From positions 186,001 through 250,000 of the IMG/VR virus record IMGVR_UViG_3300032236_002285: DNA of 64,000 nt; one strand, given 5' to 3'. A program made the position numbers and the translations under genes. Shown here piece after piece: positions 4,257-50,799 of the stretch. Each line of letters begins with the position of its first letter. Position 1 is the first letter of the stretch. Below the pieces are notes generated by a model, which searched no databases, was not told the origin of the DNA, and saw only the letters and a list, made by a program, of their open reading frames with translations.

Positions 4257-4982
4257 ATGATAGTAATTTGCAAAAGAGCAACAAAAAGAATTGTTAAAGG
4301 AGTTCGCTACGAGACGGGTAACCTATGGAACTCTGGAAACAATGCAAAATGGAGAGAAGGCAAAGTGGAAATTTTAGGAATTGGTATATTTGTAGTTGAT
4401 AACTTCACTGATACTAATGGTAATCCATTACCTAAAATTGACATTAGTGTACCTCGTCAAGTATCTGAAATATTAAAATATGAAGATGTAAAAAAAGGTG
4501 ATATCTTAGTTTGTACATCTGATATGTATAAAACCTTAGGTAAAGGTTGTATGTACCAAGTTGAATTACTAAATCAAACATCTGAACAATTAATGGGTTG
4601 GAATAAACAACCTTATACACGAGTTGAACAAACAGTAAAGTTTGTTGGTATACCTCGCACACTTAAATTTAGTGGTTGGAGATTTAGAAAATTAACTCCA
4701 CAAGAAGCTCGTGAGATTTCTCTAAATTCTGTTCTTCATGGTGAAGAACCAAAAATCACAAAGACAAAAGACATCCGTAAGATTGAAATGGCGGCTAACA
4801 AAGATTTAGAATTAATGTCTGCCATTTCAAAGTCAATAATTGACAATAATAGACACCATTTATCTATTTTAGATTGGGCTTGTCAAAAATCTAGTCAAAA
4901 TCTAGGTATAACACCTGATGATTATGTCACTCTTTTAAATATGCCTTTAAAAGATATTCTTGAAAAAATTGAAACAAAGTAA
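4257..4982 (+). CDS. hypothetical protein
   Basis: Long ORF; start reassigned to ATG 4257. Confidence 0.7.
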   Translation: MIVICKRATKRIVKGVRYETGNLWNSGNNAKWREGKVEILGIGIFVVDNFTDTNGNPLPKIDISVPRQVSEILKYEDVKKGDILVCTSDMYKTLGKGCMYQVELLNQTSEQLMGWNKQPYTRVEQTVKFVGIPRTLKFSGWRFRKLTPQEAREISLNSVLHGEEPKITKTKDIRKIEMAANKDLELMSAISKSIIDNNRHHLSILDWACQKSSQNLGITPDDYVTLLNMPLKDILEKIETK

Positions 4983-23427: not shown

Positions 23428-24216
23428 ATGACTATTGAACCCCATGAAGAATTAAAAATTTCCCAAAATTATGATGAAAAAAATCTCTCAGGAGAGCCAA
23501 CTTTTGCTGATATATATAATATAAATTTAGGTGAGCAATCACCATTAACGGCAGAAAAAGGCAATACCATTGAGGATGAATTAATGACTCCTCAAACAAA
23601 AAATGAACGGCAAATTATGGAATCGAAGGCGATTTTATTCAGTGATCAAGAAAAACTATTTAGAGAAAGAACGGGTAAAGATTTCTCTACACTCTACACA
23701 AAGTATTACCCAAAATTAGTATATTTTACATCTAAAATATGCAATGACCCTCAAAAGGCAGAAGATATCTCAACAGATTCATTCATGGCAGCTTTTGAGA
23801 AGATTGAGAAATATGAAAAGGAAAAATCTCAATTCTCTACATGGCTATTCACAATAGCAAAAAACTTAGCACTTCAAGACCTTAAAAGCAACAAAAAAAC
23901 AATGTCTTTAGATATTGAGTTTGATGATGAAGGTACAACAATGAAAGACTTTATTCAAGAAGAAGATGGTGATAATCTTATTCATGAAATTCATGCCAAA
24001 AAAGCTGAAATTATGAAGAAGCACATTCAAAACTTGAAAAATCCTTATCGTGATGTAATTGAAATGCGTGAGTTAAAAAGAATGTCTTATAAAGATATTT
24101 CTGACCAACTTAATCTTAACCTATCAACGGTTAAGTCACAAATTCGTAATGGAAGAGCTATCTTAGTTCGTGAAACTAAGAAAGAGTTTGATGCGATTGA
24201 TGAAATGTTAATGTAA
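23428..24216 (+). CDS. ECF-type sigma-70 factor
   Basis: Region 2 (AEDISTDSFMAAFEKI...FSTWLFTIAKN) and region 4 (MSYKDISDQLNLNLSTVKSQIRNGR). Confidence 0.9.
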   Translation: MTIEPHEELKISQNYDEKNLSGEPTFADIYNINLGEQSPLTAEKGNTIEDELMTPQTKNERQIMESKAILFSDQEKLFRERTGKDFSTLYTKYYPKLVYFTSKICNDPQKAEDISTDSFMAAFEKIEKYEKEKSQFSTWLFTIAKNLALQDLKSNKKTMSLDIEFDDEGTTMKDFIQEEDGDNLIHEIHAKKAEIMKKHIQNLKNPYRDVIEMRELKRMSYKDISDQLNLNLSTVKSQIRNGRAILVRETKKEFDAIDEMLM

Positions 24217-25890: not shown

Positions 25891-26465
25891 TGAAAGATAT
25901 TGGTTACCTTTTTGACCTATTGAAAAAATCTAACATATCTCTATTGGGATATAAATTTAATCAAGAAAGGCTTAAAGATGAGATTATTTCAAAACTACCT
26001 CACTTGGTGGTTCATGAAATAAACTCGTCTTTTTCTTTTAAATCTTTTTTAAGAGATTTGAAACTTCAATCAATTTTAGAAACTAGTGAGACTATAAAAA
26101 ATCCAGAGTATCTTGTTTTAGATTTGAATGATATTAGATTTAAATCAGATGATTTAGGTGATAGACAAAGACAAATATCTAATATTCTAAATAGGCTTAG
26201 AGAAGATATGTACTCTGGTTCTGATGTGCCTTATAAACTTTTGATACTCACCTCACTATACAGTAGTGGAAAGAACGTCGATGATGTTAATATTACAAAT
26301 TTTTCTGGCGGTAGCAAACCAATCTTTATGAGTGACGTAGTATTTGTAATGCAAGAAGAATCAATGAAAGTAATAAAGAATAGATTTGATGAAAACAACA
26401 TTGATATTTCTTACAATAAATTAAAAGATTATAACTATATTTGCAACTATGAAAATAACAACTAA
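25890..26465 (+). CDS. hypothetical protein (possible degenerate RecA/DnaB-fold C-terminus)
   Basis: GGSKPIFMSDVVFVM...KVIKNRF. Confidence 0.55.
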   Translation: MKDIGYLFDLLKKSNISLLGYKFNQERLKDEIISKLPHLVVHEINSSFSFKSFLRDLKLQSILETSETIKNPEYLVLDLNDIRFKSDDLGDRQRQISNILNRLREDMYSGSDVPYKLLILTSLYSSGKNVDDVNITNFSGGSKPIFMSDVVFVMQEESMKVIKNRFDENNIDISYNKLKDYNYICNYENNN

Positions 26466-26895
26466 CAAAAAAGCTTATTACGAATACTTTGTCATTGAAG
26501 ACTTTGATGCTGGTATTATGCTTTTAGGAAGTGAAGTAAAGTCAATCAGAGAAGGTAACTTGAGTTTAATTGATTGTTTTGCTTACATTTCAGATGGTGA
26601 ACTTTGGTTAAAAAATATGAAAGTGGCTCGATATAAACAAGTCCATGTTGCTGAAAAACATGAAGAAAATCGAGACAAAAAATTACTTCTCAATAGAAAA
26701 GAAATAAATAAAATTGAAAAGTTACTTCAAGATAATGGAACAACTATGGTTCCTTTAGAAGTATTCACAGCACATAATCGAATTAAAGTTAAGATTGGTG
26801 TTGTTAAAGGTAAGAAGCTATATGATAAAAGATCCACTATTAAAGAGAGAGATATAAAAAGAGAGATAAACAGAGAAAGTAATTTTAATATATAA
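26449..26895 (+). CDS. smpB: SsrA-binding protein SmpB
   Basis: NKKAYYEYF...AGIMLLGSEVKSIR...RDKKLLLNRKEI...KGKKLYDKR. Confidence 0.95.
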   Translation: MKITTNKKAYYEYFVIEDFDAGIMLLGSEVKSIREGNLSLIDCFAYISDGELWLKNMKVARYKQVHVAEKHEENRDKKLLLNRKEINKIEKLLQDNGTTMVPLEVFTAHNRIKVKIGVVKGKKLYDKRSTIKERDIKREINRESNFNI

Positions 26896-26914: not shown

Positions 26915-27787
26915 ATGTTAAACAATAAAGAAAAATCAATAAAATATTTATTGGAGAATTACTCAGTTAAATCAAAGGTTGAAATACAAAATGATTTAAA
27001 TTTATCTTGGTCTTATATACAAAAATTAGCATGTCTTAATGGTATTAAAAGAACATCAAATGAGTCACCAAATGATTGGAGATATAAAAAGTTAATAAAC
27101 TATAATGATAATATCTCTATGTATTGGATAGGATTTATGATAGCAGACGGTCATATTTCTAAAAAGAAGAATATACAGATTAATATATCTATAAAAGATA
27201 AACTACATCTGTTAAAAATAACAGAACATATTGGTAATATTTCTATAAATCTAACTGATAGTCAAATAAGAGCTACTATAAACGATAGAAGAACTACGAG
27301 TGTTTTATCAAATGATTTTAAATGGCTTTCTAATAAGACAAAAAATCCAATAGAAATACCAAAAATTATTTCTGAGGATTCTTTATTTAGTTTAATTATT
27401 GGATTTATAGATGGTGATGGTACCATAAATAAAAAAGGACATATTTTTGTTAAGTGTGATGGTTCTTGGAAGAATAATTTGGAATATTTTTATTATATAT
27501 TAACAGGTGAAAAAAAAGTATTTAATCTAACAAGTGATGGTTTATCCATAATCTATATTCTTAAATTTAAGAATTTAATTCAAATTAAAGAAAGAGCTAA
27601 ATTATTAAATTTACCAATAATGAGTAGAAAGTGGGATAGAATAGAAAATAAAGTTTTCAAGAGTGATAAATATGAGATTGTTAAAACTCTACTTAAAGAA
27701 GGTAATTCTATTAAAGAGACAATTGATAAAACAAACTTTGGACAAACTCTTGTTTATAAAGTTTATAAAGAAATTAATAAAATTTAA
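26915..27787 (+). mobile_element. free-standing LAGLIDADG homing endonuclease
   Basis: YWIGFMIADGHI and IIGFIDGDGTI motifs plus HTH-like ends. Confidence 0.85.
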
Positions 27788-27788
27788 A

Positions 27789-28151
27789 ATGGCTCGTAAA
27801 CCTAAAGATATAAATCCTCTTTTGGACAAACTCAGTAAATCACTTACTGAAGAAGAAATTCTTAAACATCTTGTTAAATTGGTAAAATCATTTGATCCTT
27901 ACCAGTATAAAGAAGTCATATATAATAACCCTTATTACAAGTCTTTAATTCCAGATATTCAAGTTGATATAATCAAAGATTTAGAAAATGTTAAAGATTC
28001 TTTAGTAAAAGAAATTGAAAAGATAGAGTCAGATCTTAAAAAGATTGGAAATAAAGACTCTGCGGAACAATTAAAAAATCTTAAAAGAGATTGTTTGGCT
28101 TTAATCTATGAAATTGATGAACGTAAAAGAGAGATAGATAGTTTATCTTAA
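27789..28151 (+). CDS. hypothetical coiled-coil protein
   Basis: Start reassigned to ATG 27789. Confidence 0.6.
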   Translation: MARKPKDINPLLDKLSKSLTEEEILKHLVKLVKSFDPYQYKEVIYNNPYYKSLIPDIQVDIIKDLENVKDSLVKEIEKIESDLKKIGNKDSAEQLKNLKRDCLALIYEIDERKREIDSLS

Positions 28152-29789
28152 TAAAGAGTCAACATATCTTTCAATGTGTTTAGCTTTCTTAATGTCTTCT
28201 ATAATTTCTTCTTCCCTTCTTTTATCAATTCTATCAATATAATACTCAGTATCACCAGAATACTGAAATTCATTTAAAATATTTCTGGTATAAAAAAACG
28301 TAAGTCCTCTTTCATTAGATAAACTTTTAATAGATTTTAATTTAGCTATAACCATTGATAAATCTTCAATAGTTTGAATATTCTGAGAAAGTAAATAATT
28401 TTTGATCTTTTTACCAATTTCCATAAATATTTTAAATATTTCCTTAATTGCCTCATTATTAGAATTATTAACTATGTTAAGAGACTTAATATATAGCTTT
28501 ATATAGTCCTCATTATAAGAATTTAGTGATTTGAAACTACTAACAATATTTGATAAGTAATAATGTCTATCTGATTCATCAGCTTTCATTATTTCATAAA
28601 TATTATTAGACATACTATCTAAAGTGTCAAATCCTGGTCTACTTTTATAAATTGAAATAAAAGCAAAATCACTACAAACTGATTTTATAACTAATTTTTG
28701 AAGATTTTTAAGTTCAGTAATATCTTGTTTAATACCCATTTTACCAACTAATGCAGACATGTATCTTTCAATGTTAGCCTTTTTTATTTCAGAATCACTT
28801 ACTAATCTAGTAGCACCTTCTCTTGATTCAGTTCTACTTTTTCTTACATCACTAACTTTAGTTCCAACAGATTTAAGTACATCACCAATCATTAAAACAA
28901 TAGCAAAGTCTGATCTATCAACTGATTTATAATCATATATTGACCAATCTGTTTCACCCCACTCTCTTAAATTATAATTTTTATTTACTGGAAGATTGAA
29001 ATCAAATGGATTTGATTCTTTTTTCTTTTCTTCTTCTTTTATTTTTCCTACTACATGTATAGGTTCATCTGATGGTGTATAAATATGTAGTTTACCATGG
29101 TCACTAGCTGGTGAATCCACATCACCCATTGTCCAAGAATCTATAAATCTTGAATCTTGATTTCTCCATTCTCTCCAATTTACTCCATCTACCGCACGGT
29201 CAGGTGTTCCACCATTAGCAACATTTTGAATGGCGTTAAGATGATCATTGTCATCTCTCCATATTTTAGCTAACGACAATCTATTTAAATCTTCATAATC
29301 TTCAGACCAAACACCAATAACTAATTGGCCATGTTGTAATTCATTATAATCTTTAACCGGTGTTAATTTACCTGTTTTTATATCTAATGTGTTTTTTATG
29401 TAATCTAATTCTTCATTACTAAATGGTTCATTCTGATTTGTTTTTGCATAACCTTTAAGATACTTATTAAAATCCATTGTAAGATCACCTGTACCTGTGA
29501 ATCCTAAATATCCCTCATCCATTGAGAACCAGAATTTCAAACAGTATAGACCTCTTTCATCTTCCTCAGTTGATTTTATTTTAAGTGCTTGATTTTTATT
29601 AAGATACTTAACATTATCATCTTTGATTTTATCAATAGGAATATCTAATTTAGCTATCATAGTTTTTAATTTATCACGGAATCTTTCTTTGGAATTATTA
29701 TCTACTTTACTTTTCAAAAATTTCATCATTTTTGACAAAGCATTAGATTCAAAAGCCTCAAATAACATTAGATATTTCATGTCTGACAT
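28143..29789 (-). CDS. hypothetical protein with N-terminal MKYLMLFEAFES tag
   Basis: 548 aa; TAATATATA motif at 29794-29802. Confidence 0.7.
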   Translation of the reverse strand: MSDMKYLMLFEAFESNALSKMMKFLKSKVDNNSKERFRDKLKTMIAKLDIPIDKIKDDNVKYLNKNQALKIKSTEEDERGLYCLKFWFSMDEGYLGFTGTGDLTMDFNKYLKGYAKTNQNEPFSNEELDYIKNTLDIKTGKLTPVKDYNELQHGQLVIGVWSEDYEDLNRLSLAKIWRDDNDHLNAIQNVANGGTPDRAVDGVNWREWRNQDSRFIDSWTMGDVDSPASDHGKLHIYTPSDEPIHVVGKIKEEEKKKESNPFDFNLPVNKNYNLREWGETDWSIYDYKSVDRSDFAIVLMIGDVLKSVGTKVSDVRKSRTESREGATRLVSDSEIKKANIERYMSALVGKMGIKQDITELKNLQKLVIKSVCSDFAFISIYKSRPGFDTLDSMSNNIYEIMKADESDRHYYLSNIVSSFKSLNSYNEDYIKLYIKSLNIVNNSNNEAIKEIFKIFMEIGKKIKNYLLSQNIQTIEDLSMVIAKLKSIKSLSNERGLTFFYTRNILNEFQYSGDTEYYIDRIDKRREEEIIEDIKKAKHIERYVDSLLR

Positions 29790-29809
29790 ACTCTATATAT
29801 TAAAAAATA

Positions 29810-29841
29810 TTTGGTAAAATAAAACTTTATTCTTAATTTTG
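29810..29841 (+). promoter_or_regulatory. Bacteroidota sigma70-type promoter
   Basis: TTTG-N20-TAATTTTG. Confidence 0.75.
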
Positions 29842-29852
29842 TATAACAAACA

Positions 29853-30245
29853 AAGAGTCGTTAAGACAAAAGTTAAGAAATTAACAAGTTGAAAGACTTC
29901 ACATTATAAACAATTTAGAAGATAAGTGTGAGTCTTAACGAAATTATGGTAGTAAGTAGCTGTTAAATATGTTAACACCCTTGTTAAAGCCAGTGAACTA
30001 CCTTGTATTATATTATATGATAATAGTAAGGGTGTAGATATCAAAGTCGTGTTGGTGATAGATGTCTCAAATATAACTAAATGAATAAACCCAACTCAAA
30101 GAAGATTAAACCGAGCAGAATGGTAACACTGCTCAACCGAGGCGAAAGCATATTAAAAGGTAATCCTAAGTGATGAGGTCACTAAAAGTTAAGGTAAGGT
30201 TCTCGGATTTCGACCATACTTAGCAGGCGTTCCAAACATCTTCTT
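29853..30245 (+). ncRNA. putative large structured ncRNA
   Basis: No ORF; many complementary segments, two crossing helix pairs and GNRA loops; directly after a promoter. Confidence 0.6.
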
Positions 30246-30276
30246 TTTTTATTAAAAATTATTAAAAACAAAGTAT

Positions 30277-30684
30277 ATGACACTGAAAGAAAAAATTAAC
30301 GCAGACTTCATTACAGCTTTTAAATCTAAAAACGCTGTTGCTAAAAGTATTTTATCCGTAGTAAAGGGTGAAATTCAAAATATTGAAAAGAACGTAGGCT
30401 CTGATAATCTTTCAGATGTTGAAGTAACTAAGATTTTAACAAAGACTGTTAAATCTCTTAAAGAAACTATTGCATTAAGCAATGACGAAAAATCTAAGCT
30501 TGAATTAGCTATTGTTGAAGTTTATCTTCCAAAGCAAATGTCTAAAGAAGAAGTTACTGCTAAAGTAACAGAACTTGTAAATTCTGGTATCACTCAAATT
30601 GGTGCCATCATGAAAGAATTTGCAACTCTTCCAGCTGACAAGAAAATGGTCTCTGAATCAATCAAAGAAGTTACTAAACAGTAA
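30277..30684 (+). CDS. GatB/YqeY domain protein
   Basis: MTLKEKINADFITAFKSK...ELAIVEVYLPKQMSKEEV...GAIMK. Confidence 0.85.
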   Translation: MTLKEKINADFITAFKSKNAVAKSILSVVKGEIQNIEKNVGSDNLSDVEVTKILTKTVKSLKETIALSNDEKSKLELAIVEVYLPKQMSKEEVTAKVTELVNSGITQIGAIMKEFATLPADKKMVSESIKEVTKQ

Positions 30685-32368: not shown

Positions 32369-32457
32369 ATTTGGTAGAATTAAAACTTTTTACTAATTTT
32401 GTATAAAATAAGAACAAAAATAACAAAAGAGACAATAACTTTTTAATATATAAAGAA

Positions 32458-33174: not shown

Positions 33175-33717
33175 ATGAAAGAGGAAATATTAAAGTTAAG
33201 AAGTGAAGGTAAGACTTTTAATGAAATAAAAGAAATACTAAAATGTTCAAAATCTACAATATCTTACCATTGTAGTGATGAACAAAAAGAAAAATCTAGA
33301 AATAGAACTAGAAAAAGAAGAGAGAATTTAATTCACTCTAAACTTGAAAGTTTTATCTATAGAAAAGAAAAAAATGTAAAAGAAGGAATAAGAAAGTTTC
33401 AAAAAACTGACTCAAATTCTAAAGGAAGGGTTAATAGTAATATTAAAACAACATTTAATTGGGTTGATGTTTTGAATAAGTTTGGTGAAAATACATATTG
33501 TTATTTGTCTGGAGAGAAAATTAACCTATATGAAGATAACTACAACTTTGACCATATTATACCAGTTAGTAAAAATGGTAGTAATAGTTTAGAAAACTTA
33601 GGAATTCTACACGAAAAAGTAAATAGAATGAAATCTGACTTATCACCAGAAGAATTAATAGAATGGTGTAAAAAGATTTTAGAGTTTAATAATTATAAAA
33701 TAGAAAAATTAGATTAA
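33175..33717 (+). mobile_element. HTH-HNH endonuclease inserted in tRNA array
   Basis: DHIIPVSKNGSNSLENLGILHEKVNRMKSD. Confidence 0.85.
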
Positions 33718-33871: not shown

Positions 33872-33958
33872 GGTTCTGTCGCTTAGCGGCTATAGCAACT
33901 GGCTTTTAACCAGTAGAGATAATGTTCTCAACCGTGGGTTCGAGTCCCACCAGGACCA
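33872..33958 (+). tRNA. tRNA-Lys(UUU) with long variable arm
   Basis: ACTGG-CTTTTAA-CCAGT then GAGA-taatgt-TCTC arm. Confidence 0.8.
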
Positions 33959-33966
33959 CTAAAAAC

Positions 33967-34050
33967 ACTCCTGTCGCTCAGAGGTCGAGAGCAACTGGCT
34001 TTTAACCAGTAGACGCAAGTCCATCGTAGGTTCGAATCCTACCAGGAGTA
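33967..34050 (+). tRNA. tRNA-Lys(UUU) with long variable arm
   Basis: ACTGG-CTTTTAA-CCAGT then GAC-GCAA-GTC arm. Confidence 0.8.
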
Positions 34051-34054
34051 CTAA

Positions 34055-34137
34055 CGATTCGTCGCATAGTGGCTATTGCACCTGACTCTTAATCAGGCGA
34101 AGAAATTCAATCGTGGGTTCGAGTCCCACCGGGTCGA
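34055..34137 (+). tRNA. tRNA-Lys(CUU) with long variable arm
   Basis: CCTGA-CTCTTAA-TCAGG then GAA-gaaa-TTC arm. Confidence 0.8.
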
Positions 34138-34145
34138 CAAAAAAT

Positions 34146-34432: not shown

Positions 34433-35065
34433 ATGGAAATAAAATTAGAAAGTACTTACAAAGGAACAAGGATTCTTTTTAAGGACAGCGCTAAAAATAA
34501 AAGAAAGTTACTAAATAGCATGATTGATATTTTAGAATCATATGGTTATCAGGAAATAATGATACCTATTATTCAAAAACAAGAAACATTTCAGTCAAAA
34601 GTTGGTGATGAAAACAGAAATATGATGTTTAACTTCAAAGACAGAGGTGATAGAGATTTGTGTTTATCTCCAGAGTACACGGCAATTGTTCAACAATTAT
34701 CAAGTGATAAAATGAAATATGATAAAGATGTAAAAATGTTTTATATCGGTGAATGTTTCAGAGGAGAAAATACACAATCTGGAAGATGGAGACAATTTAC
34801 ACAATTTGGAGTTGAAGTTATAAATCCAAGTAAAGATTATACTGATGAAATGGTTGAAATTGCCAGTAAACTAATTGAGTTAGTTACAAAAAATTATGAA
34901 GTAAATCTGGAAACTACAAGAGGACTTGACTACTACAAAGGTGGAAAAGGATTTGAAATTGCTTGTCCCGAATTAGGATCATCTAAGCAAATTTGTGGAG
35001 GTGGTTCATATGATGGTGGTATTGGATTTGCTGTTGGTGTAGATAGATTACTATTATGTAAATAA
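34433..35065 (+). CDS. minimal histidyl-tRNA synthetase-like catalytic core (no anticodon-binding domain)
   Basis: Motif 1 GYQEIMIPII, LSPEYTA, motif 2 FRGENTQSGRWRQFTQFGVE, GLDYY, motif 3 GGGSYD-GGIGFAVGVDRL; only 210 aa. Confidence 0.8.
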   Translation: MEIKLESTYKGTRILFKDSAKNKRKLLNSMIDILESYGYQEIMIPIIQKQETFQSKVGDENRNMMFNFKDRGDRDLCLSPEYTAIVQQLSSDKMKYDKDVKMFYIGECFRGENTQSGRWRQFTQFGVEVINPSKDYTDEMVEIASKLIELVTKNYEVNLETTRGLDYYKGGKGFEIACPELGSSKQICGGGSYDGGIGFAVGVDRLLLCK

Positions 35066-35074
35066 AAATAAATT

Positions 35075-35202
35075 GGGGATGTAGCTCAGTGGTAGAGAAA
35101 ACTATCTCTTTTGAAAATTTACCTCATAAGAGTGTTGATTGAGAGAGTTACTTCGTATATTTTGAAATTATAAGGTCGTGGGTTCGAATCCCACCATCCC
35201 CA
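35075..35202 (+). tRNA. tRNA (anticodon probably UGA) interrupted by ~55-60 nt structured insert
   Basis: GGGGATG/CATCCCC acceptor, canonical D and T arms, insert ending TTACTTCG; anticodon assignment uncertain. Confidence 0.6.
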
Positions 35203-35281
35203 CAAAAAAGATTTGGTAAATCAATAAAAAAGATTTACTTTTGTAAAAACAAAGAAAAGAAAATTAATATATAATAAAGTT

Positions 35282-45625: not shown

Positions 45626-45711
45626 GCTACGGTATGCAAACCGGAATAAGCGACCAGACTTTCAATCTGGACATCGAAAGATGTGTGCGGGTTCGAGCCC
45701 CGTCCGTAGTA
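45626..45711 (+). tRNA. tRNA-Glu(UUC) with long variable arm
   Basis: CCAGA-CTTTCAA-TCTGG then ACATC-GAAA-GATGT. Confidence 0.8.
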
Positions 45712-45718
45712 CAAATAA

Positions 45719-47835: not shown

Positions 47836-50799
47836 ATGAAAAAGATCCTAAAGTTCTTACTAGTGTCATTGACTCTAGTATTTTTTGTGCCTAAACAAGC
47901 ACAAGCCTCTCATTGCGCTGGAGCTGAATTATTATTCCAATGGCTTCATGACTCAACTTATCAACTTTATTACAAGTTTTACCGTGATTGTGCCGGTATT
48001 AATGAGCCAACAAATGTTACAGTTTGTTGTAGTAACAATTGTAATTCAACTACAATCAACGTAATTTTAAACAAAGTTACTACACTTATTCCTCCTGGTG
48101 TAAATAATGGAAATGAAGTTGCTAGAGTTTGTCCTGGTATACATACCACTTGTGGTAATCCAGCCGGAACAACACCTGGCTACAGAGAATGGTGGTATGC
48201 TAATACTGTAACTCTACCATCAAGATGTAACCACTGGACTTTTTCAGTAAGTCAGTCAGCTAGAAACTCTGGTATTACTAATTTATCTAATCCAGGTTCT
48301 CAAAATCTTTATACAGAAGCCACACTTGATAATAGAGATGCTCAAGGTGATACCTCACCTTTCTTTTCTGTTAAGCCGGTCCCGTATATCTGTGCTAATA
48401 TACCATACACTTATAACAATGGAGCTTATGACTTAAATAACGACTCTATGGTGTTTAAAATTGTTCAACCAAATGGTGGCTCAGGTTGTCCTCCAACCAC
48501 GTCAGCCATTGCTTTTGCTAATACAACACCAAGTTTAAATCTAACTGATAATCCTTTACAAACAAACAATACTTTTTCTATAAATGCTCAAAATGGATTG
48601 ATGAGTTTTACTCCAGCTGGAACACAAATTGCAGTTGTAACTATTCAAGTAGATGAATATAGAAATGGTAGAAAAATTGGTTCTGTAATGCGTGATATTC
48701 AAATTATTGTTTTGTCTTGTAATGTTCAGCAACCAGAAGTAAATATATCTGCTGCTTCTTTAAATAATGCAACTCTTGATAATAATGGAAACATTACAGC
48801 TTGTGCTGGAACACCTTTTAGTTTTTGTTTTGATGCTACAACACCAGATTCAAATGGTATTTTACTCGCATCTGATAACTCAAATATTGTAATGCCTAAT
48901 TCAGTAGTATCATATACTAATCAAACTACAGATACGGTTACTGGTTGTTTTTCTTGGTGGCCTTCTGTGTATGATACAGGTTATAAAATTTTTACAATAA
49001 CTATAATGGATTCATCTTGTCGTCCTCCTGGCTTAATGTTTTCACAAACATTTACCTTACCAATTTATGTTTGGCCTGCGACTAATATTCTAAGTGATAC
49101 CACAATCTGTAGAGGTGGTGCTGCAAATTTACTTGCTGTTGGTGGTGGAAATTTTATTTGGTCGGTTTTACCAGGAGGTTCTGCTTTATCAACTTTAAAC
49201 TGCACAAACTGCTCAAATCCAGTTGCTACTCCAATAATCACAACTCAGTATGTAGCTACATCTCAAATAACAAATGCTATTTGTAAAAATAAAGATACGG
49301 TAACAGTAGCGGTTATTCAACCATTTCAGATTATACTACCTGATACAACAACATGTGTTAATAATTCTTTACAATTAAATGCAGTAGTTAATACAACAAA
49401 TAATTATACTATATCCTGGACACCAAATACTTATTTAAGTAATGCTGGTATTAATAATCCAATTGTAACACCACCATCTGGTCAATCATTGATAACTTAC
49501 TATGTTAAAGTTTCTTCAATTGGTTCATCAGCTTGTTCAGTTACAGATACATTCAAATTAAAAGTTTTACAAGGATTTACTATCTATAATCATGATACAA
49601 CAATTTGTCTTGGTAAATCAGTAAATATAGCCGGCTCTGGTGATGCTTTATATAATTATACTTGGACACCAACCAGTGGTATAAGTACAATACTTACACC
49701 ATCAATAACACCAAATGTAGTTACAACAACAACGTATATTTTAACAGGTAAATATCCTGGTTGTAAAGATTCTACTAATAAAATTAAAATCACAACAGAA
49801 CCTGTACCAACTGTAGTAGCTGGTGCTGATAGACAAATATGTAGTGGTGATACTATTCATCTTACACCTTTAGTTACTCCAAGTTATCCATATGTTTACA
49901 CTTGGACACCAGGATCTTCATTAGATAATCCAAATTCTGAATTTGCTATCTTTTCAGGATTAATCACAACTCATTTATCACTAACTGTTAAATCACCAGT
50001 TGCTAATTGTTCATCAGCTGATAGTTTAATTATTAATGTAGTTAAACAATCTTTCTTAAAGGTTTCACCACAAGACACTTCAATTTGTCCATCTGATACA
50101 GTTATGATTAAATTAACCACACCTAATGATAAGTTAGTTATTTTTAATTGGAGCCCTCATAATTTTATCAGTGATTATAATTCAGTTAATCCTTATTTAT
50201 ACCCACCAACATCAATGGTTTATACTGCTTGGGCTACTGATACAGCTGGTTGTAATGATACTATATCAGCTTATATTGAAATTAGACCAGGTGCTGTAAT
50301 TGACATGCCTACATCAATTGGTTTATATCCTGGTGATTCTTATCAAATAACACCTCAAACTAACTGTACTAAATTTATTTGGTTTCCATCAAGTGGTTTA
50401 AATTATGACTCATTATCAAATCCAACAGTGACCAACTTAGGAGTTAATACTAAGTATATAGTTATTGGTCAAACAGAATGGGGATGTAAAGTATCTGATT
50501 CAATAAATGTAATGGTTATTAATGATTCTTATATTGATATACCTAATGCTTTTTCACCTACAGGTGATCACAATAAAACACTAAAAGTAATTCATTTAGG
50601 TTCTGCTACTCTTGAATATTTTAGAATATACAATAGATGGGGTAATAAAGTTTTTGAAACAAATGATATTAATGTTGGATGGGATGGTACTTATAATGGT
50701 CAAGCTCAATCACAAGGTGTTTATGTTTATGAAGTAAAAGCAATAACATATAAAGGTAGGGTCTTTATTAAACAAGGCAATATAACTTTGATGAAATAA
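47836..50799 (+). CDS. secreted adhesin-like protein with T9SS type-B (gliding motility-associated) C-terminal domain
   Basis: Signal peptide, ASHCAGAE start, Ig/PKD-like repeats, IPNAFSP...FRIYNRWGNKVFE...WDGTYNG...GVYVY...GNITLMK. Confidence 0.9.
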   Translation: MKKILKFLLVSLTLVFFVPKQAQASHCAGAELLFQWLHDSTYQLYYKFYRDCAGINEPTNVTVCCSNNCNSTTINVILNKVTTLIPPGVNNGNEVARVCPGIHTTCGNPAGTTPGYREWWYANTVTLPSRCNHWTFSVSQSARNSGITNLSNPGSQNLYTEATLDNRDAQGDTSPFFSVKPVPYICANIPYTYNNGAYDLNNDSMVFKIVQPNGGSGCPPTTSAIAFANTTPSLNLTDNPLQTNNTFSINAQNGLMSFTPAGTQIAVVTIQVDEYRNGRKIGSVMRDIQIIVLSCNVQQPEVNISAASLNNATLDNNGNITACAGTPFSFCFDATTPDSNGILLASDNSNIVMPNSVVSYTNQTTDTVTGCFSWWPSVYDTGYKIFTITIMDSSCRPPGLMFSQTFTLPIYVWPATNILSDTTICRGGAANLLAVGGGNFIWSVLPGGSALSTLNCTNCSNPVATPIITTQYVATSQITNAICKNKDTVTVAVIQPFQIILPDTTTCVNNSLQLNAVVNTTNNYTISWTPNTYLSNAGINNPIVTPPSGQSLITYYVKVSSIGSSACSVTDTFKLKVLQGFTIYNHDTTICLGKSVNIAGSGDALYNYTWTPTSGISTILTPSITPNVVTTTTYILTGKYPGCKDSTNKIKITTEPVPTVVAGADRQICSGDTIHLTPLVTPSYPYVYTWTPGSSLDNPNSEFAIFSGLITTHLSLTVKSPVANCSSADSLIINVVKQSFLKVSPQDTSICPSDTVMIKLTTPNDKLVIFNWSPHNFISDYNSVNPYLYPPTSMVYTAWATDTAGCNDTISAYIEIRPGAVIDMPTSIGLYPGDSYQITPQTNCTKFIWFPSSGLNYDSLSNPTVTNLGVNTKYIVIGQTEWGCKVSDSINVMVINDSYIDIPNAFSPTGDHNKTLKVIHLGSATLEYFRIYNRWGNKVFETNDINVGWDGTYNGQAQSQGVYVYEVKAITYKGRVFIKQGNITLMK

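What the first reader, a model, noticed from the sequence alone, without database searches (positions are those of the whole stretch)
29853..30245. ~390 nt ORF-free, promoter-driven, pseudoknotted ncRNA candidate
It starts just after a TTTG-N20-TAATTTTG promoter. Visible helices: TCGTTAAGAC(29858)/GTCTTAACGA(29932); GGTAGT(29948)/ACTACC(29997) crossing ACACCCTT(29975)/AAGGGTGT(30028); GAGCAG/CTGCTC hairpin with GTAA loop; GC-GAAA-GC; CCGAG(30137)/CTCGG(30202) crossing CTAAGT(30166)/ACTTAG(30218). It lacks tmRNA termini and RNase P signatures, although SmpB is encoded 3 kb away and YqeY follows directly.
Basis: partly seen in the sequence, partly recalled or inferred. Interest (0 to 1): 0.65.

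Follow-up and report, generated by a model that had tools for sequence, protein, structure and literature searches.

The report
New pseudoknotted RNA of huge phages
The gap between two genes of this 476-kb phage of Bacteroidota encodes a real, roughly 390-nucleotide, heavily knotted non-coding RNA that matches no described RNA family, recurs in about a hundred related huge-phage sequences from lakes, rivers and seas, and sits among the phage's own translation genes, so it is a new large RNA whose job is still to be found.

Summary
The finding holds. Window 29842-30245 (+) is a non-coding RNA gene behind an invariant Bacteroidota-type promoter (TTTG 29810, TAATTTTG 29834). About 100 homologues turned up in viral and metagenome contigs and none in 185,579 species genomes. 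Compensatory changes support a 5' four-way junction, three pseudoknots and a highly conserved 140-nt 3' domain. A different pseudoknot replaces them: AAUCC/GGAUU crossing GUUAAG/CUUAGC.

Rfam 15 gives no match at E<=10 in seven members, and ARAGORN finds no tmRNA. There is no tRNA-like domain and no tag reading frame.

Contigs from four metatranscriptome studies cover the RNA, start near the predicted start site and stop at a conserved ...GUUCCA (30234). Conservation stops at that same base.

Synteny smpB - orf120 - orf548 - RNA - yqeY, with tRNA arrays nearby, is widespread but not universal. All six large genomes with this RNA have SmpB and no recognisable tmRNA.

Best reading: a new family of stable, trans-acting structured RNA in the phage's tRNA/translation module. 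Its partner and chemistry are unknown. Rival readings are a yqeY leader, an aberrant SmpB partner, or a ribozyme.

The parts
29810..29841 (+). Bacteroidota-type promoter: -33 TTTG (29810-29813) and -7 TAATTTTG (29834-29841)
   Evidence: Read. The TAnnTTTG box is present at the expected place in 10 of 11 distinct viral-contig homologues. The motif is enriched in the window, 16 against 5.8 expected, and near-identical copies precede tRNA arrays at 32370, 35212, 45245 and 46195.
29842..30245 (+). The RNA gene. 29842 is the first base after the promoter's -7 box and the first column of my alignment; the start site is predicted about 29847-29852. The first base covered by an RNA-library contig is 29857. 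The observed mature 3' end is A30234 of ...GUUCCA. The precursor runs at least to 30245.
   Evidence: homologue alignments; contigs from 4 metatranscriptome studies; one contig is bounded by adapter at 30095 and 30234, others end at about 30233, and one starts at 29857.
29858..29941 (+). 5' domain. Closing helix H1 is 29858-29867 / 29932-29941, around a junction with two GAAA-capped hairpins and helix UCACA 29899 / UGUGA 29927. Size and content vary between lineages.
   Evidence: 135 double-change cells against 45 in shuffles, 0 of 200 shuffles as high; duplex energy of a sequence's own strands -9.7 against -5.3 kcal/mol for strands from different sequences.
29948..30035 (+). Pseudoknot A. H2 is 29948-29953 / 29997-30002 and H3 is 29959-29962 / 29991-29994, separated by an invariant AAGUA / GA(A) internal loop that fits the sarcin-ricin (loop E) consensus. 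H4, 29975-29982 / 30028-30035, crosses both. An AU-rich variable loop lies at 30003-30027.
   Evidence: H2 96.8%, H3 99.7% and H4 95.9% of cells paired, with 33, 55 and 64 double-change cells against 7, 10 and 19 in shuffles. Present in every lineage examined. The loop-E assignment rests on my own knowledge of the motif.
30036..30097 (+). Pseudoknot B. The loop GUGUUGG 30049-30055 of hairpin H5 (30036-30042 / 30061-30067) pairs with CCAACUC 30091-30097. It is absent from the L063 lineage, so it is dispensable.
   Evidence: H5 84 double-change cells against 28; H12 27 against 9.
30099..30245 (+). 3' domain closed by the long-range helix H6, AAGAAGAU 30099-30106 / AUCUUCUU 30238-30245. This is the most conserved part of the RNA.
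   Evidence: own -9.1 against cross -6.0 kcal/mol. The column counts are blurred by register shifts. Covariance model R1 finds this domain in 99 of 100 loci at 86-179 bits, and once in the 476-kb genome.
30113..30134 (+). Hairpin H7, GAGCAG / CUGCUC, with the invariant loop AAUGGUAACA (UG/CA plus a GUAA tetraloop)
   Evidence: CG 56, UA 16, UG 10 at the covarying pair. Loop variants are listed.
30141..30150 (+). Hairpin H8, GC-GAAA-GC here; up to about 30 nt longer in relatives
   Evidence: length-variable, always self-complementary.
30162..30224 (+). Pseudoknot C. H10 AAUCC 30162-30166 / GGAUU 30205-30209 crosses H11 GUUAAG 30188-30193 / CUUAGC 30219-30224 and H13 GGUU 30198-30201 / GACC 30212-30215. 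The invariant hairpin H9, AGUGA 30169 / UCACU 30179, lies between.
   Evidence: H10 99.2% paired with 19 double-change cells against 2.9; H11 99.4% with 63 against 15. Independent compensations of H10 occur in L038, L058 and L100.
30225..30234 (+). 3' tail AGGCGUUCCA. GUUCC is invariant in 94 of 99 sequences, and conservation ends at the A of CCA.
26449..26895 (+). smpB (canonical, 175 bits to PF01668)
   Evidence: synteny.
28143..29789 (-). orf548, a divergently transcribed conserved hypothetical protein sharing the intergenic region
30277..30684 (+). yqeY (GatB/YqeY tRNA-binding-type domain), starting 32 nt after H6
   Evidence: synteny.

Best explanation
This is the founding example of a previously undescribed family of large (about 385-440 nt), stable, structured non-coding RNA, carried as a single copy by huge ('Mahaphage'-type) phages of Bacteroidota. 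Shown: it has its own promoter of the host type, of the same sub-class that drives the phage's tRNA operons. Shown: the + strand folds into a variable 5' junction, a universally present pseudoknot A with a loop-E-like module, an optional pseudoknot B, and a near-invariant 140-nt 3' domain (a junction of a GNRA hairpin, a variable hairpin and a nested pseudoknot C). Shown with less certainty: the RNA accumulates in nature as a discrete species running from near the promoter to a conserved 3'-terminal ...GUUCCA, and does not continue at the same level into yqeY. Inferred: it acts in trans as an RNA or RNP component of the phage's translation and tRNA take-over module, alongside smpB, yqeY, 53 tRNAs and a CCA-adding enzyme. 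The most likely action is binding a tRNA-shaped ligand or a tRNA-binding protein through its invariant loops (UGGUAAC, GGUAAUCC, AGUA/GAA). Helix H6, which covaries but lies beyond the observed 3' end, would then serve the precursor, in folding or processing. The exact partner and any chemistry are not known.
For: About 100 homologues were found. Conservation exceeds that of the flanking proteins: the 3' domain is nearly invariant, while orf548 is 27-97% and YqeY 50-94% identical. Covariation is strong. The nested helices have 98.6% of cells paired, 87 double-change cells against 21 in shuffles (0 of 500 as high), and only 25-47% paired in slid controls. Every pseudoknot helix beats all 200 shuffles. 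Duplexes between a sequence's own strands are more stable than duplexes between strands of different sequences, and the negative control is flat. G-U pairs fix the strand as +. No Rfam family matches at E<=10 here or at E<=1 in six diverse members. No copy exists in 185,579 species genomes by two patterns. The genome holds one copy. Contigs from four metatranscriptome studies lie on 29857-30234. One is bounded by sequencing adapter exactly at ...CCA 30234, a 417-nt contig ends at GUUCC, and only shallower contigs lie on yqeY. Sequence conservation stops at CCA. The RNA persists where yqeY is absent (L059, L063, L115), where orf548 is absent (L063 and L038 lineages), and where smpB is not nearby (L098 group), so it is not an appendage of any single neighbour. 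The context is translational: SmpB, YqeY, tRNA arrays, a CCA-adding enzyme family member, and shared promoter type with tRNA operons.
Against: No experiment or computation here identifies a partner or an activity. The RNA-library evidence comes from assembled contigs of relatives. Depth is not quantitative, DNA carry-over cannot be excluded, and the less conserved flanks would not align anyway (caveats). No intrinsic terminator separates the RNA from yqeY, so the two are probably co-transcribed at least initially. H6 covaries although it lies beyond the observed 3' end. The L038 lineage lacks the GUUCCA tail. Twelve other phage smpB loci have neither this RNA nor a tmRNA within 4 kb, so linkage to smpB need not be functional. 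The proposed pairing of the H7 loop with the 3' tail has no covariation support.
Confidence: 0.6

Rival explanations
1. It is a cis-acting 5' leader, riboswitch-like or T-box-like, that senses a ligand or a tRNA and controls the yqeY-orf70 operon immediately downstream.
For: A co-oriented gene starts about 30 nt after the RNA in nearly all loci: yqeY, or orf70 where yqeY is missing. There is no terminator in between. In a more distant phage, tRNAs occupy the same place directly upstream of yqeY, so co-transcription of structured RNA with yqeY has a precedent. Low-depth RNA contigs do cross 30236-30271.
Against: The RNA is kept unchanged when the downstream gene differs (L059, L063, L115) or lies 1.5-2.6 kb away (L046, L095). 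RNA-library contigs end at CCA, and conservation ends there too. No expression platform (alternative terminator/antiterminator or start-codon sequestering helix) is conserved. At 390 nt with three pseudoknots it is far larger than known leaders. No riboswitch or T-box model matches.
Confidence: 0.2
2. It is a highly aberrant tmRNA, or another RNA partner of the phage SmpB, used in ribosome rescue or its subversion.
For: smpB lies 1-3 kb upstream in most loci, across lineages as far apart as L038 and L063. All six large genomes carrying the RNA encode SmpB yet have no tmRNA above threshold. A string of pseudoknots and a 3' CCA are features of tmRNA.
Against: There is no acceptor stem formed by the two ends, no G3-U70, no T arm and no D-loop analogue. 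The GGAUU that resembles the tmRNA D-loop motif covaries as a helix strand instead. There is no conserved reading frame: indels are not multiples of three and stops occur in all frames. ARAGORN and all Rfam tmRNA models are silent. The phage SmpB is canonical and could simply use host tmRNA. Some lineages have the RNA without smpB nearby. Other phage smpB loci have neither RNA. No AlaRS is encoded.
Confidence: 0.08
3. It is a ribozyme: an RNase-P-like tRNA-processing catalyst, or a self-processing RNA that creates its own CCA end. Alternatively it is an RNA that assembles with itself into a multimer, as ROOL and GOLLD do.
For: Size and pseudoknot density are typical of large ribozymes. The invariant UGG-containing loop and GGUAA motifs recall the CCA-binding and elbow-binding elements of RNase P and T-box RNAs (my own knowledge). 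The RNA is linked to 53 tightly packed tRNA genes, some with unusual insertions. It has a defined 3' end. Covariation cannot tell intramolecular from intermolecular loop pairings.
Against: No sequence or model similarity to any ribozyme class. No cleavage site or catalytic core can be named. Host RNase P would suffice for tRNA processing. Nothing here tests catalysis or oligomerisation.
Confidence: 0.1
4. It is not a functional RNA: a conserved DNA element (origin, packaging or regulatory site) or an unrecognised small protein gene.
For: It lies in a divergent intergenic region that also holds the promoter of orf548.
Against: Compensatory base changes that keep Watson-Crick and G-U pairs on one strand only are not expected of a DNA site or a coding region. 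There is no conserved ORF. It is found in RNA libraries.
Confidence: 0.02

Closest known systems
tmRNA (SsrA; Rfam RF00023 and the permuted forms RF01849-51, RF02544)
   Same: Similar length. Several H-type pseudoknots in a row. The gene lies near smpB. The 3' end is CCA. It is a promoter-driven stable RNA in a translation context.
   Different: It has no tRNA-like domain (acceptor stem, G3-U70, T arm), no tag reading frame, no model or ARAGORN match, and its 5' end is a local hairpin domain rather than one strand of an acceptor stem.
GOLLD (RF01998) and ROOL (RF03087), large ornate RNAs of phages and prophages
   Same: A large, intricately folded, pseudoknotted RNA of unknown biochemical function. 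It is phage-borne and close to tRNA gene arrays.
   Different: There is no sequence or structure match. It is smaller (about 390 nt against about 580-800 nt). The host range differs (Bacteroidota huge phages against mostly Bacillota and others). Whether it multimerises is untested.
tRNA-binding RNAs: RNase P RNA (RF00010/RF00011) and T-box leaders (RF00230)
   Same: It has an invariant loop with UGG that could pair with a CCA end, GGUAA-type motifs, a GNRA tetraloop, and genomic association with tRNAs. These are resemblances recalled from memory, not tests.
   Different: There is no model match. It has no P4-type conserved core, no P1 formed by the two ends, no specifier or antiterminator, and no terminator.

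Membership tests
tmRNA | tRNA-like domain: acceptor stem formed by the 5' and 3' ends with G3-U70, plus a T arm | tested here: not met
   ARAGORN finds no tmRNA in the window or in the 476-kb genome. The seven nucleotides before the U-CCA tail (CAGGCGU here; CAGACGU and CAGAAGU in relatives) have no complement at the 5' end. No hairpin has a T-loop.
tmRNA | mRNA-like tag reading frame with a resume codon and an in-frame stop | tested here: not met
   The single-stranded stretches differ between homologues by 1-2-nt indels and carry stops in all frames. Candidate frames differ in length and content.
tmRNA | Match to the curated covariance models (standard and permuted) | tested here: not met
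   No match at the gathering score or at E<=10. RF00023 hits in the genome are tRNAs only.
tmRNA | 3'-terminal CCA | tested here: inconclusive
   UUCCA is conserved in most members (about 90 of 99). One RNA-library contig is bounded by adapter right after it, and others end there. It is not preceded by an acceptor stem and is absent from the L038 lineage.
tmRNA | Linkage with smpB (typical, not defining) | tested here: met
   smpB lies 1-3 kb upstream in most loci long enough to show it, but not in the L098/L119/L120 group.
RNase P RNA | Match to RF00010/RF00011/RF00373; a conserved P4 core and a P1 formed by the two ends | tested here: not met
   No Rfam match. The 5' end forms a local hairpin domain. 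The CR-I and CR-V sequences are not present, judged by reading and my own knowledge.
GOLLD / ROOL | Match to RF01998 / RF03087 | tested here: not met
   No match at E<=10 or at E<=1 in six other members.
GOLLD / ROOL | Homo-oligomeric RNA-only assembly | not testable with these tools
   This needs native gels or cryo-EM of the transcript.
T-box leader / riboswitch | A model match and an expression platform (terminator/antiterminator or start-site sequestration) | tested here: not met
   No Rfam match. No terminator-like site in 29600-30500.
   No match. The element lies between a promoter and a separate gene, not inside one.
The new family itself (working definition) | Pseudoknot A with the AAGUA/GA(A) loop, plus the 3' domain (H7 loop AAUGGUAACA, H9 AGUGA-N5-UCACU-AAAAGU, pseudoknot C, GUUCCA tail) | tested here: met
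   The window scores 169 bits against model R1. 99 of 100 related loci score 86-179 bits. The architecture was compared across ten diverse members.

The most novel reading that the evidence does not exclude
The RNA is a new kind of partner for the trans-translation and tRNA machinery: a tRNA-domain-less, tag-less RNA that the phage deploys with its own SmpB and/or YqeY to capture or re-route stalled host ribosomes or tRNAs. This would be a viral replacement, or decoy, for tmRNA. Equally unexcluded is a new large ribozyme acting on the phage's unusual tRNAs.
Probability: 0.12. Interest if true: 0.95.

Novelty: categorically new. Interest (0 to 1): 0.78.

Why it matters
Large RNAs with complex, covariation-proven folds are rare. 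Only about a dozen bacterial or phage classes are known, and nearly every one whose function was solved turned out to be a ribozyme or a core RNP. This one is new at the level of RNA family: no Rfam 15 match and no mention in the literature held here. It is restricted to the largest known phages and is embedded in their translation take-over module, so it bears on an open question: what huge phages do with their own tRNAs, SmpB and ribosome factors. It is also practical to study. It is about 390 nt, has a clear promoter and 3' end, has about 100 natural variants for structure modelling, and has three obvious candidate protein partners encoded next to it. 'New' here means new family. Whether its mechanism is also new cannot be said yet.

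Tried and rejected
- **Rfam.** I ran Rfam 15 on the window at gathering scores, on 29700-30400 at E<=10, on six diverse homologues at E<=1, and on 24 related yqeY or smpB loci. Only tRNAs were found.
- **ARAGORN.** No tmRNA in the window or the whole genome.
- **Manual mapping to tmRNA.** I tried both the standard and the permuted layout. The GGAUUUCGAC that looks like the tmRNA 5' motif is in fact a covarying helix strand, and no acceptor stem, T arm or tag exists.
- **Sub-threshold RF00023 hit.** The hit at 35075-35205 (31 bits) is a tRNA-shaped gene with an insertion, not a tmRNA piece belonging to this RNA.
- **Folding energy.** The z-scores are -1.5 (+ strand) and -0.9 (- strand). They are uninformative in this AT-rich sequence.
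- **All-against-all column covariation.** The scan was swamped by the co-inherited changes of one divergent lineage (L038 group) and gave no reliable new pairs.
- **H7 loop with the 3' tail.** UGG(U)AAC with GUUCCA is plausible as six pairs with a variable bulge. Both sides are invariant, and the L038 lineage does not compensate, so it remains unproven.
- **orf548 as a clue.** There is no Pfam, PHROG or NCBIfam family. It has 193 homologues, all unnamed apart from a few automatic 'RimP' or 'Jag' labels. The atlas search was blank. The AlphaFold model (pLDDT 80) has no Foldseek match at E<=0.001 and only Z<=5.6 helical look-alikes by VIA-align. No conclusion.
- **Do other phage smpB loci carry a canonical tmRNA where this RNA sits?** Twelve loci have neither, so the test gives no support for a replacement.
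- **Cellular homologue.** Two pattern scans of 185,579 species genomes found none.
- **Chance matches.** Loci L039, L040, L042 and L043, and probably L041 (dropped as a duplicate and never examined), were chance matches to a 17-base pattern and were discarded.
- **Not used.** Complex prediction was not used, because it takes proteins only and no protein pair is claimed to bind.

Full report
**Setting.**
The window is bases 186001-250000 of a 476,236-bp virus record, 97% complete by CheckV, with about 30% G+C. The genome carries 53 tRNA genes and no tmRNA by ARAGORN. It also carries a canonical smpB, a sigma-70 factor, a thioredoxin, a NAD-dependent DNA ligase, a protein with a CHU_C type-IX-secretion domain, and a CCA-adding/poly(A)-polymerase family enzyme. 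The nearest named relative of the locus is LR745206.1, the 634,780-bp 'uncultured phage'. Its size matches one of the four largest curated genomes of the huge-phage survey PMC7162821, which assigns its largest genomes (those over 634 kb) to the Mahaphage clade with predicted Bacteroidetes hosts.

**The observation.**
- The finding lies in the 487-bp gap between orf548 (28143-29789, minus strand) and yqeY (30277-30684, plus strand). No ORF of 60 aa or more lies in the gap.
- This -33/-7 pair is the Bacteroidota sigma-A consensus (my own knowledge). It occurs 16 times in the window against 5.8 expected, with 0 of 100 shuffles as high.
- Near-identical extended copies sit directly upstream of the tRNA arrays at 32370, 35212, 45245 and 46195.

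**Homologues.**
- BLAST and pattern scans found 11 distinct copies in viral contigs.
- A further 91 stretches turned up in metagenome contigs from lakes, rivers, seas and other waters.
- Two specific patterns found nothing in one genome each of 185,579 bacterial and archaeal species.
- A covariance model of the 3' domain (R1) hits 99 of 100 related loci at 86-179 bits and the 476-kb genome exactly once.
- The -7 box is present at the expected place in 10 of the 11 distinct viral-contig copies and in most metagenome ones.

**Structure.**
I derived helices from the alignments and tested them in four ways.
1. Per-pair counts on 79 distinct sequences.
2. Shuffle and slide controls.
3. Duplex energy of a sequence's own two strands against strands taken from different sequences, with a negative control.
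4. The session's own counter on the model-based alignment of the 3' domain. It gave 98.6% of cells paired, 87 double-change cells against 21 in shuffles (0 of 500 as high), and 25-47% paired when partners are slid.

The supported model, in window coordinates:
- **H1:** 29858-67 / 29932-41, closing a variable junction.
- **Pseudoknot A:** H2 is 29948-53 / 29997-30002 and H3 is 29959-62 / 29991-94. They are separated by an invariant AAGUA / GA(A) internal loop that fits the loop-E (sarcin-ricin) consensus. H4 (29975-82 / 30028-35) crosses them.
- **Pseudoknot B:** H5 is 30036-42 / 30061-67, and its loop 30049-55 pairs with 30091-97.
- **H6:** 30099-106 / 30238-45, closing the 3' domain.
- **Inside the 3' domain:** H7 (30113-18 / 30129-34, loop AAUGGUAACA), the length-variable H8, the invariant hairpin H9 (30169-73 / 30179-83), and pseudoknot C.
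- **Pseudoknot C:** H10 (30162-66 / 30205-09) crosses H11 (30188-93 / 30219-24) and H13 (30198-201 / 30212-15).

Further points:
- G-U pairs that would be C-A on the other strand fix the RNA as the + strand.
- Pseudoknot A and the 3' domain are present in every lineage. Pseudoknot B is missing in the L063 lineage, and the 5' domain varies from about 60 to 110 nt.

**Expression and ends.**
- Six metatranscriptome runs hold part of the stretch. I laid four of them, from four studies (sponge, two freshwater, riverine), as contigs.
- Contigs 80-99% identical to the window lie on 29857-30234. None lies on 29700-29847, and only shallower ones lie on yqeY.
- One contig, 99% identical, spans 30095-30234 with Illumina adapter on both sides, so that insert ended at the A of ...GUUCCA.
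- A 417-nt riverine contig ends at GUUCC and is about as long as the whole RNA.
- A third contig ends at the same place, and a fourth begins at 29857.
- Independently, alignment conservation stops at that CCA. GUUCC is invariant in 94 of 99 sequences, and the next three bases are free to vary.
- The caveats are real. These are assembled contigs of relatives, depth is not a measure of expression, DNA carry-over cannot be excluded, and the divergent flanks might not align.
- I therefore treat 'discrete stable RNA ending at CCA' as likely, not proven.
- H6 covaries although its 3' strand lies beyond that end. I read this as a role in the precursor (inference).

**What it is not.**
- Rfam 15 gives nothing at E<=10 on the region and nothing at E<=1 on six diverse members. 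That covers tmRNA in all forms, RNase P, GOLLD, ROOL, OLE, group I introns, T-box and riboswitches.
- A tmRNA reading fails on both defining parts. There is no acceptor stem, G3-U70 or T arm, and there is no tag frame (indels of 1-2 nt, stops in all frames).
- The GGAUUUCGAC that resembles the tmRNA 5' motif is one strand of the covarying H10.

**Context.**
- The order smpB - orf120 - orf548 (opposite strand) - RNA - yqeY - orf70 holds in most loci. In this window a LAGLIDADG ORF is inserted after smpB.
- No single neighbour is constant. The L063 lineage has smpB-orf120-RNA-orf70 without orf548 or yqeY. L059 and L115 lack yqeY. The L098, L119 and L120 group has no smpB within 5 kb.
- tRNA arrays lie within 0.5-2.5 kb in this window, in L059 and in L063. 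In a more distant phage, tRNAs occupy the place directly upstream of yqeY.
- All six large genomes with the RNA (this one, LR745206.1 and four IMG/VR records) have SmpB and no tmRNA above threshold.
- That pattern is weak evidence, because twelve other phage smpB loci have neither RNA within 4 kb.
- orf548 gave no clue.

**Mechanism.**
- The best-supported statement is that this is a stable, trans-acting, intricately folded RNA that belongs functionally to the phage's tRNA and translation module.
- Its invariant single-stranded elements are the likeliest contact surfaces for a tRNA-shaped ligand or for tRNA-binding proteins such as SmpB or YqeY. These elements are the UGG-containing H7 loop, the GGUAAUCC stretch, the AGUA/GAA loop and the CCA tail. 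This step is inference.
- I give the overall statement 0.6. The rivals are a cis leader of yqeY (0.2), a ribozyme or self-assembling RNA (0.1), an aberrant SmpB partner or tmRNA surrogate (0.08), and not an RNA at all (0.02).

**Novelty.**
No Rfam family and no paper in the held library describes it. The two 2026 preprints on genome-language-model mining of non-coding space do not mention it. It is a new RNA family. Whether its function is new is open.

The flanking genes are intact under table 11.

Noticed in passing
window 35075-35205 (+), next to ORF 34433-35065: A 131-nt tRNA-shaped gene with canonical acceptor, D and T arms and an internal insertion of about 55 nt. ARAGORN misses it, and it scores 31 bits (below threshold) against the tmRNA model through its tRNA-like ends only. 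It directly follows a 210-aa ORF that matches only the N-terminal part of histidyl-tRNA synthetase. It could be an intron-bearing tRNA or a tRNA-like regulatory element.
   Followed up: partly
window 33872-33959, 33967-34051, 34055-34138, 45626-45712; genome 255781, 257011, 257626, 257997, 258256, 272129: Many phage tRNAs for amino acids that normally have short variable loops (Lys, Glu, Ile, Asn, Thr, Met, Gln) are 83-88 nt long, with an insertion of about 11 nt or more in the variable region. Each often stands beside a normal-length isoacceptor. ARAGORN also reports two tRNA-like genes with irregular anticodon loops at genome 257917 and 271550.
   Followed up: no
window 26915-27787 (+) and 33175-33717 (+): A LAGLIDADG-type ORF is inserted between smpB and orf120. 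Among about 100 related loci only one other (L125) has it. An HNH endonuclease ORF sits between tRNA clusters. Both look like homing endonuclease insertions in the translation-gene region.
   Followed up: partly
window 19394, 31901, 32370, 35212, 45245, 46195, 51099 (+): A family of extended promoters, TTTGGTnnAnTnAAAnnTTT...TAnnTTTG, shared by the RNA gene and the tRNA arrays. It may be a phage-specific middle or late class, possibly read with the phage sigma factor encoded at 23428-24216.
   Followed up: partly
window 28143-29789 (-): orf548 is a two-domain protein (N-terminal beta-rich, C-terminal helical; pLDDT 80) with 193 homologues. It has no family, no name and no solved-structure match. 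A few automatic 'RimP' or 'Jag' labels hint weakly at RNA binding.
   Followed up: partly
window 47836-50799 (+); genome 378839-379207: A 987-aa ORF ends in a CHU_C type-IX-secretion sorting domain, which supports a Bacteroidota host. The phage also encodes a CCA-adding/poly(A)-polymerase family enzyme but no alanyl-tRNA synthetase.
   Followed up: no
L016:1402-2986 and 4334-4970: In a more distant huge-phage contig, an array of tRNA genes ends 15 nt before the yqeY homologue. yqeY is therefore linked to tRNA genes in phages that lack this RNA.
   Followed up: no
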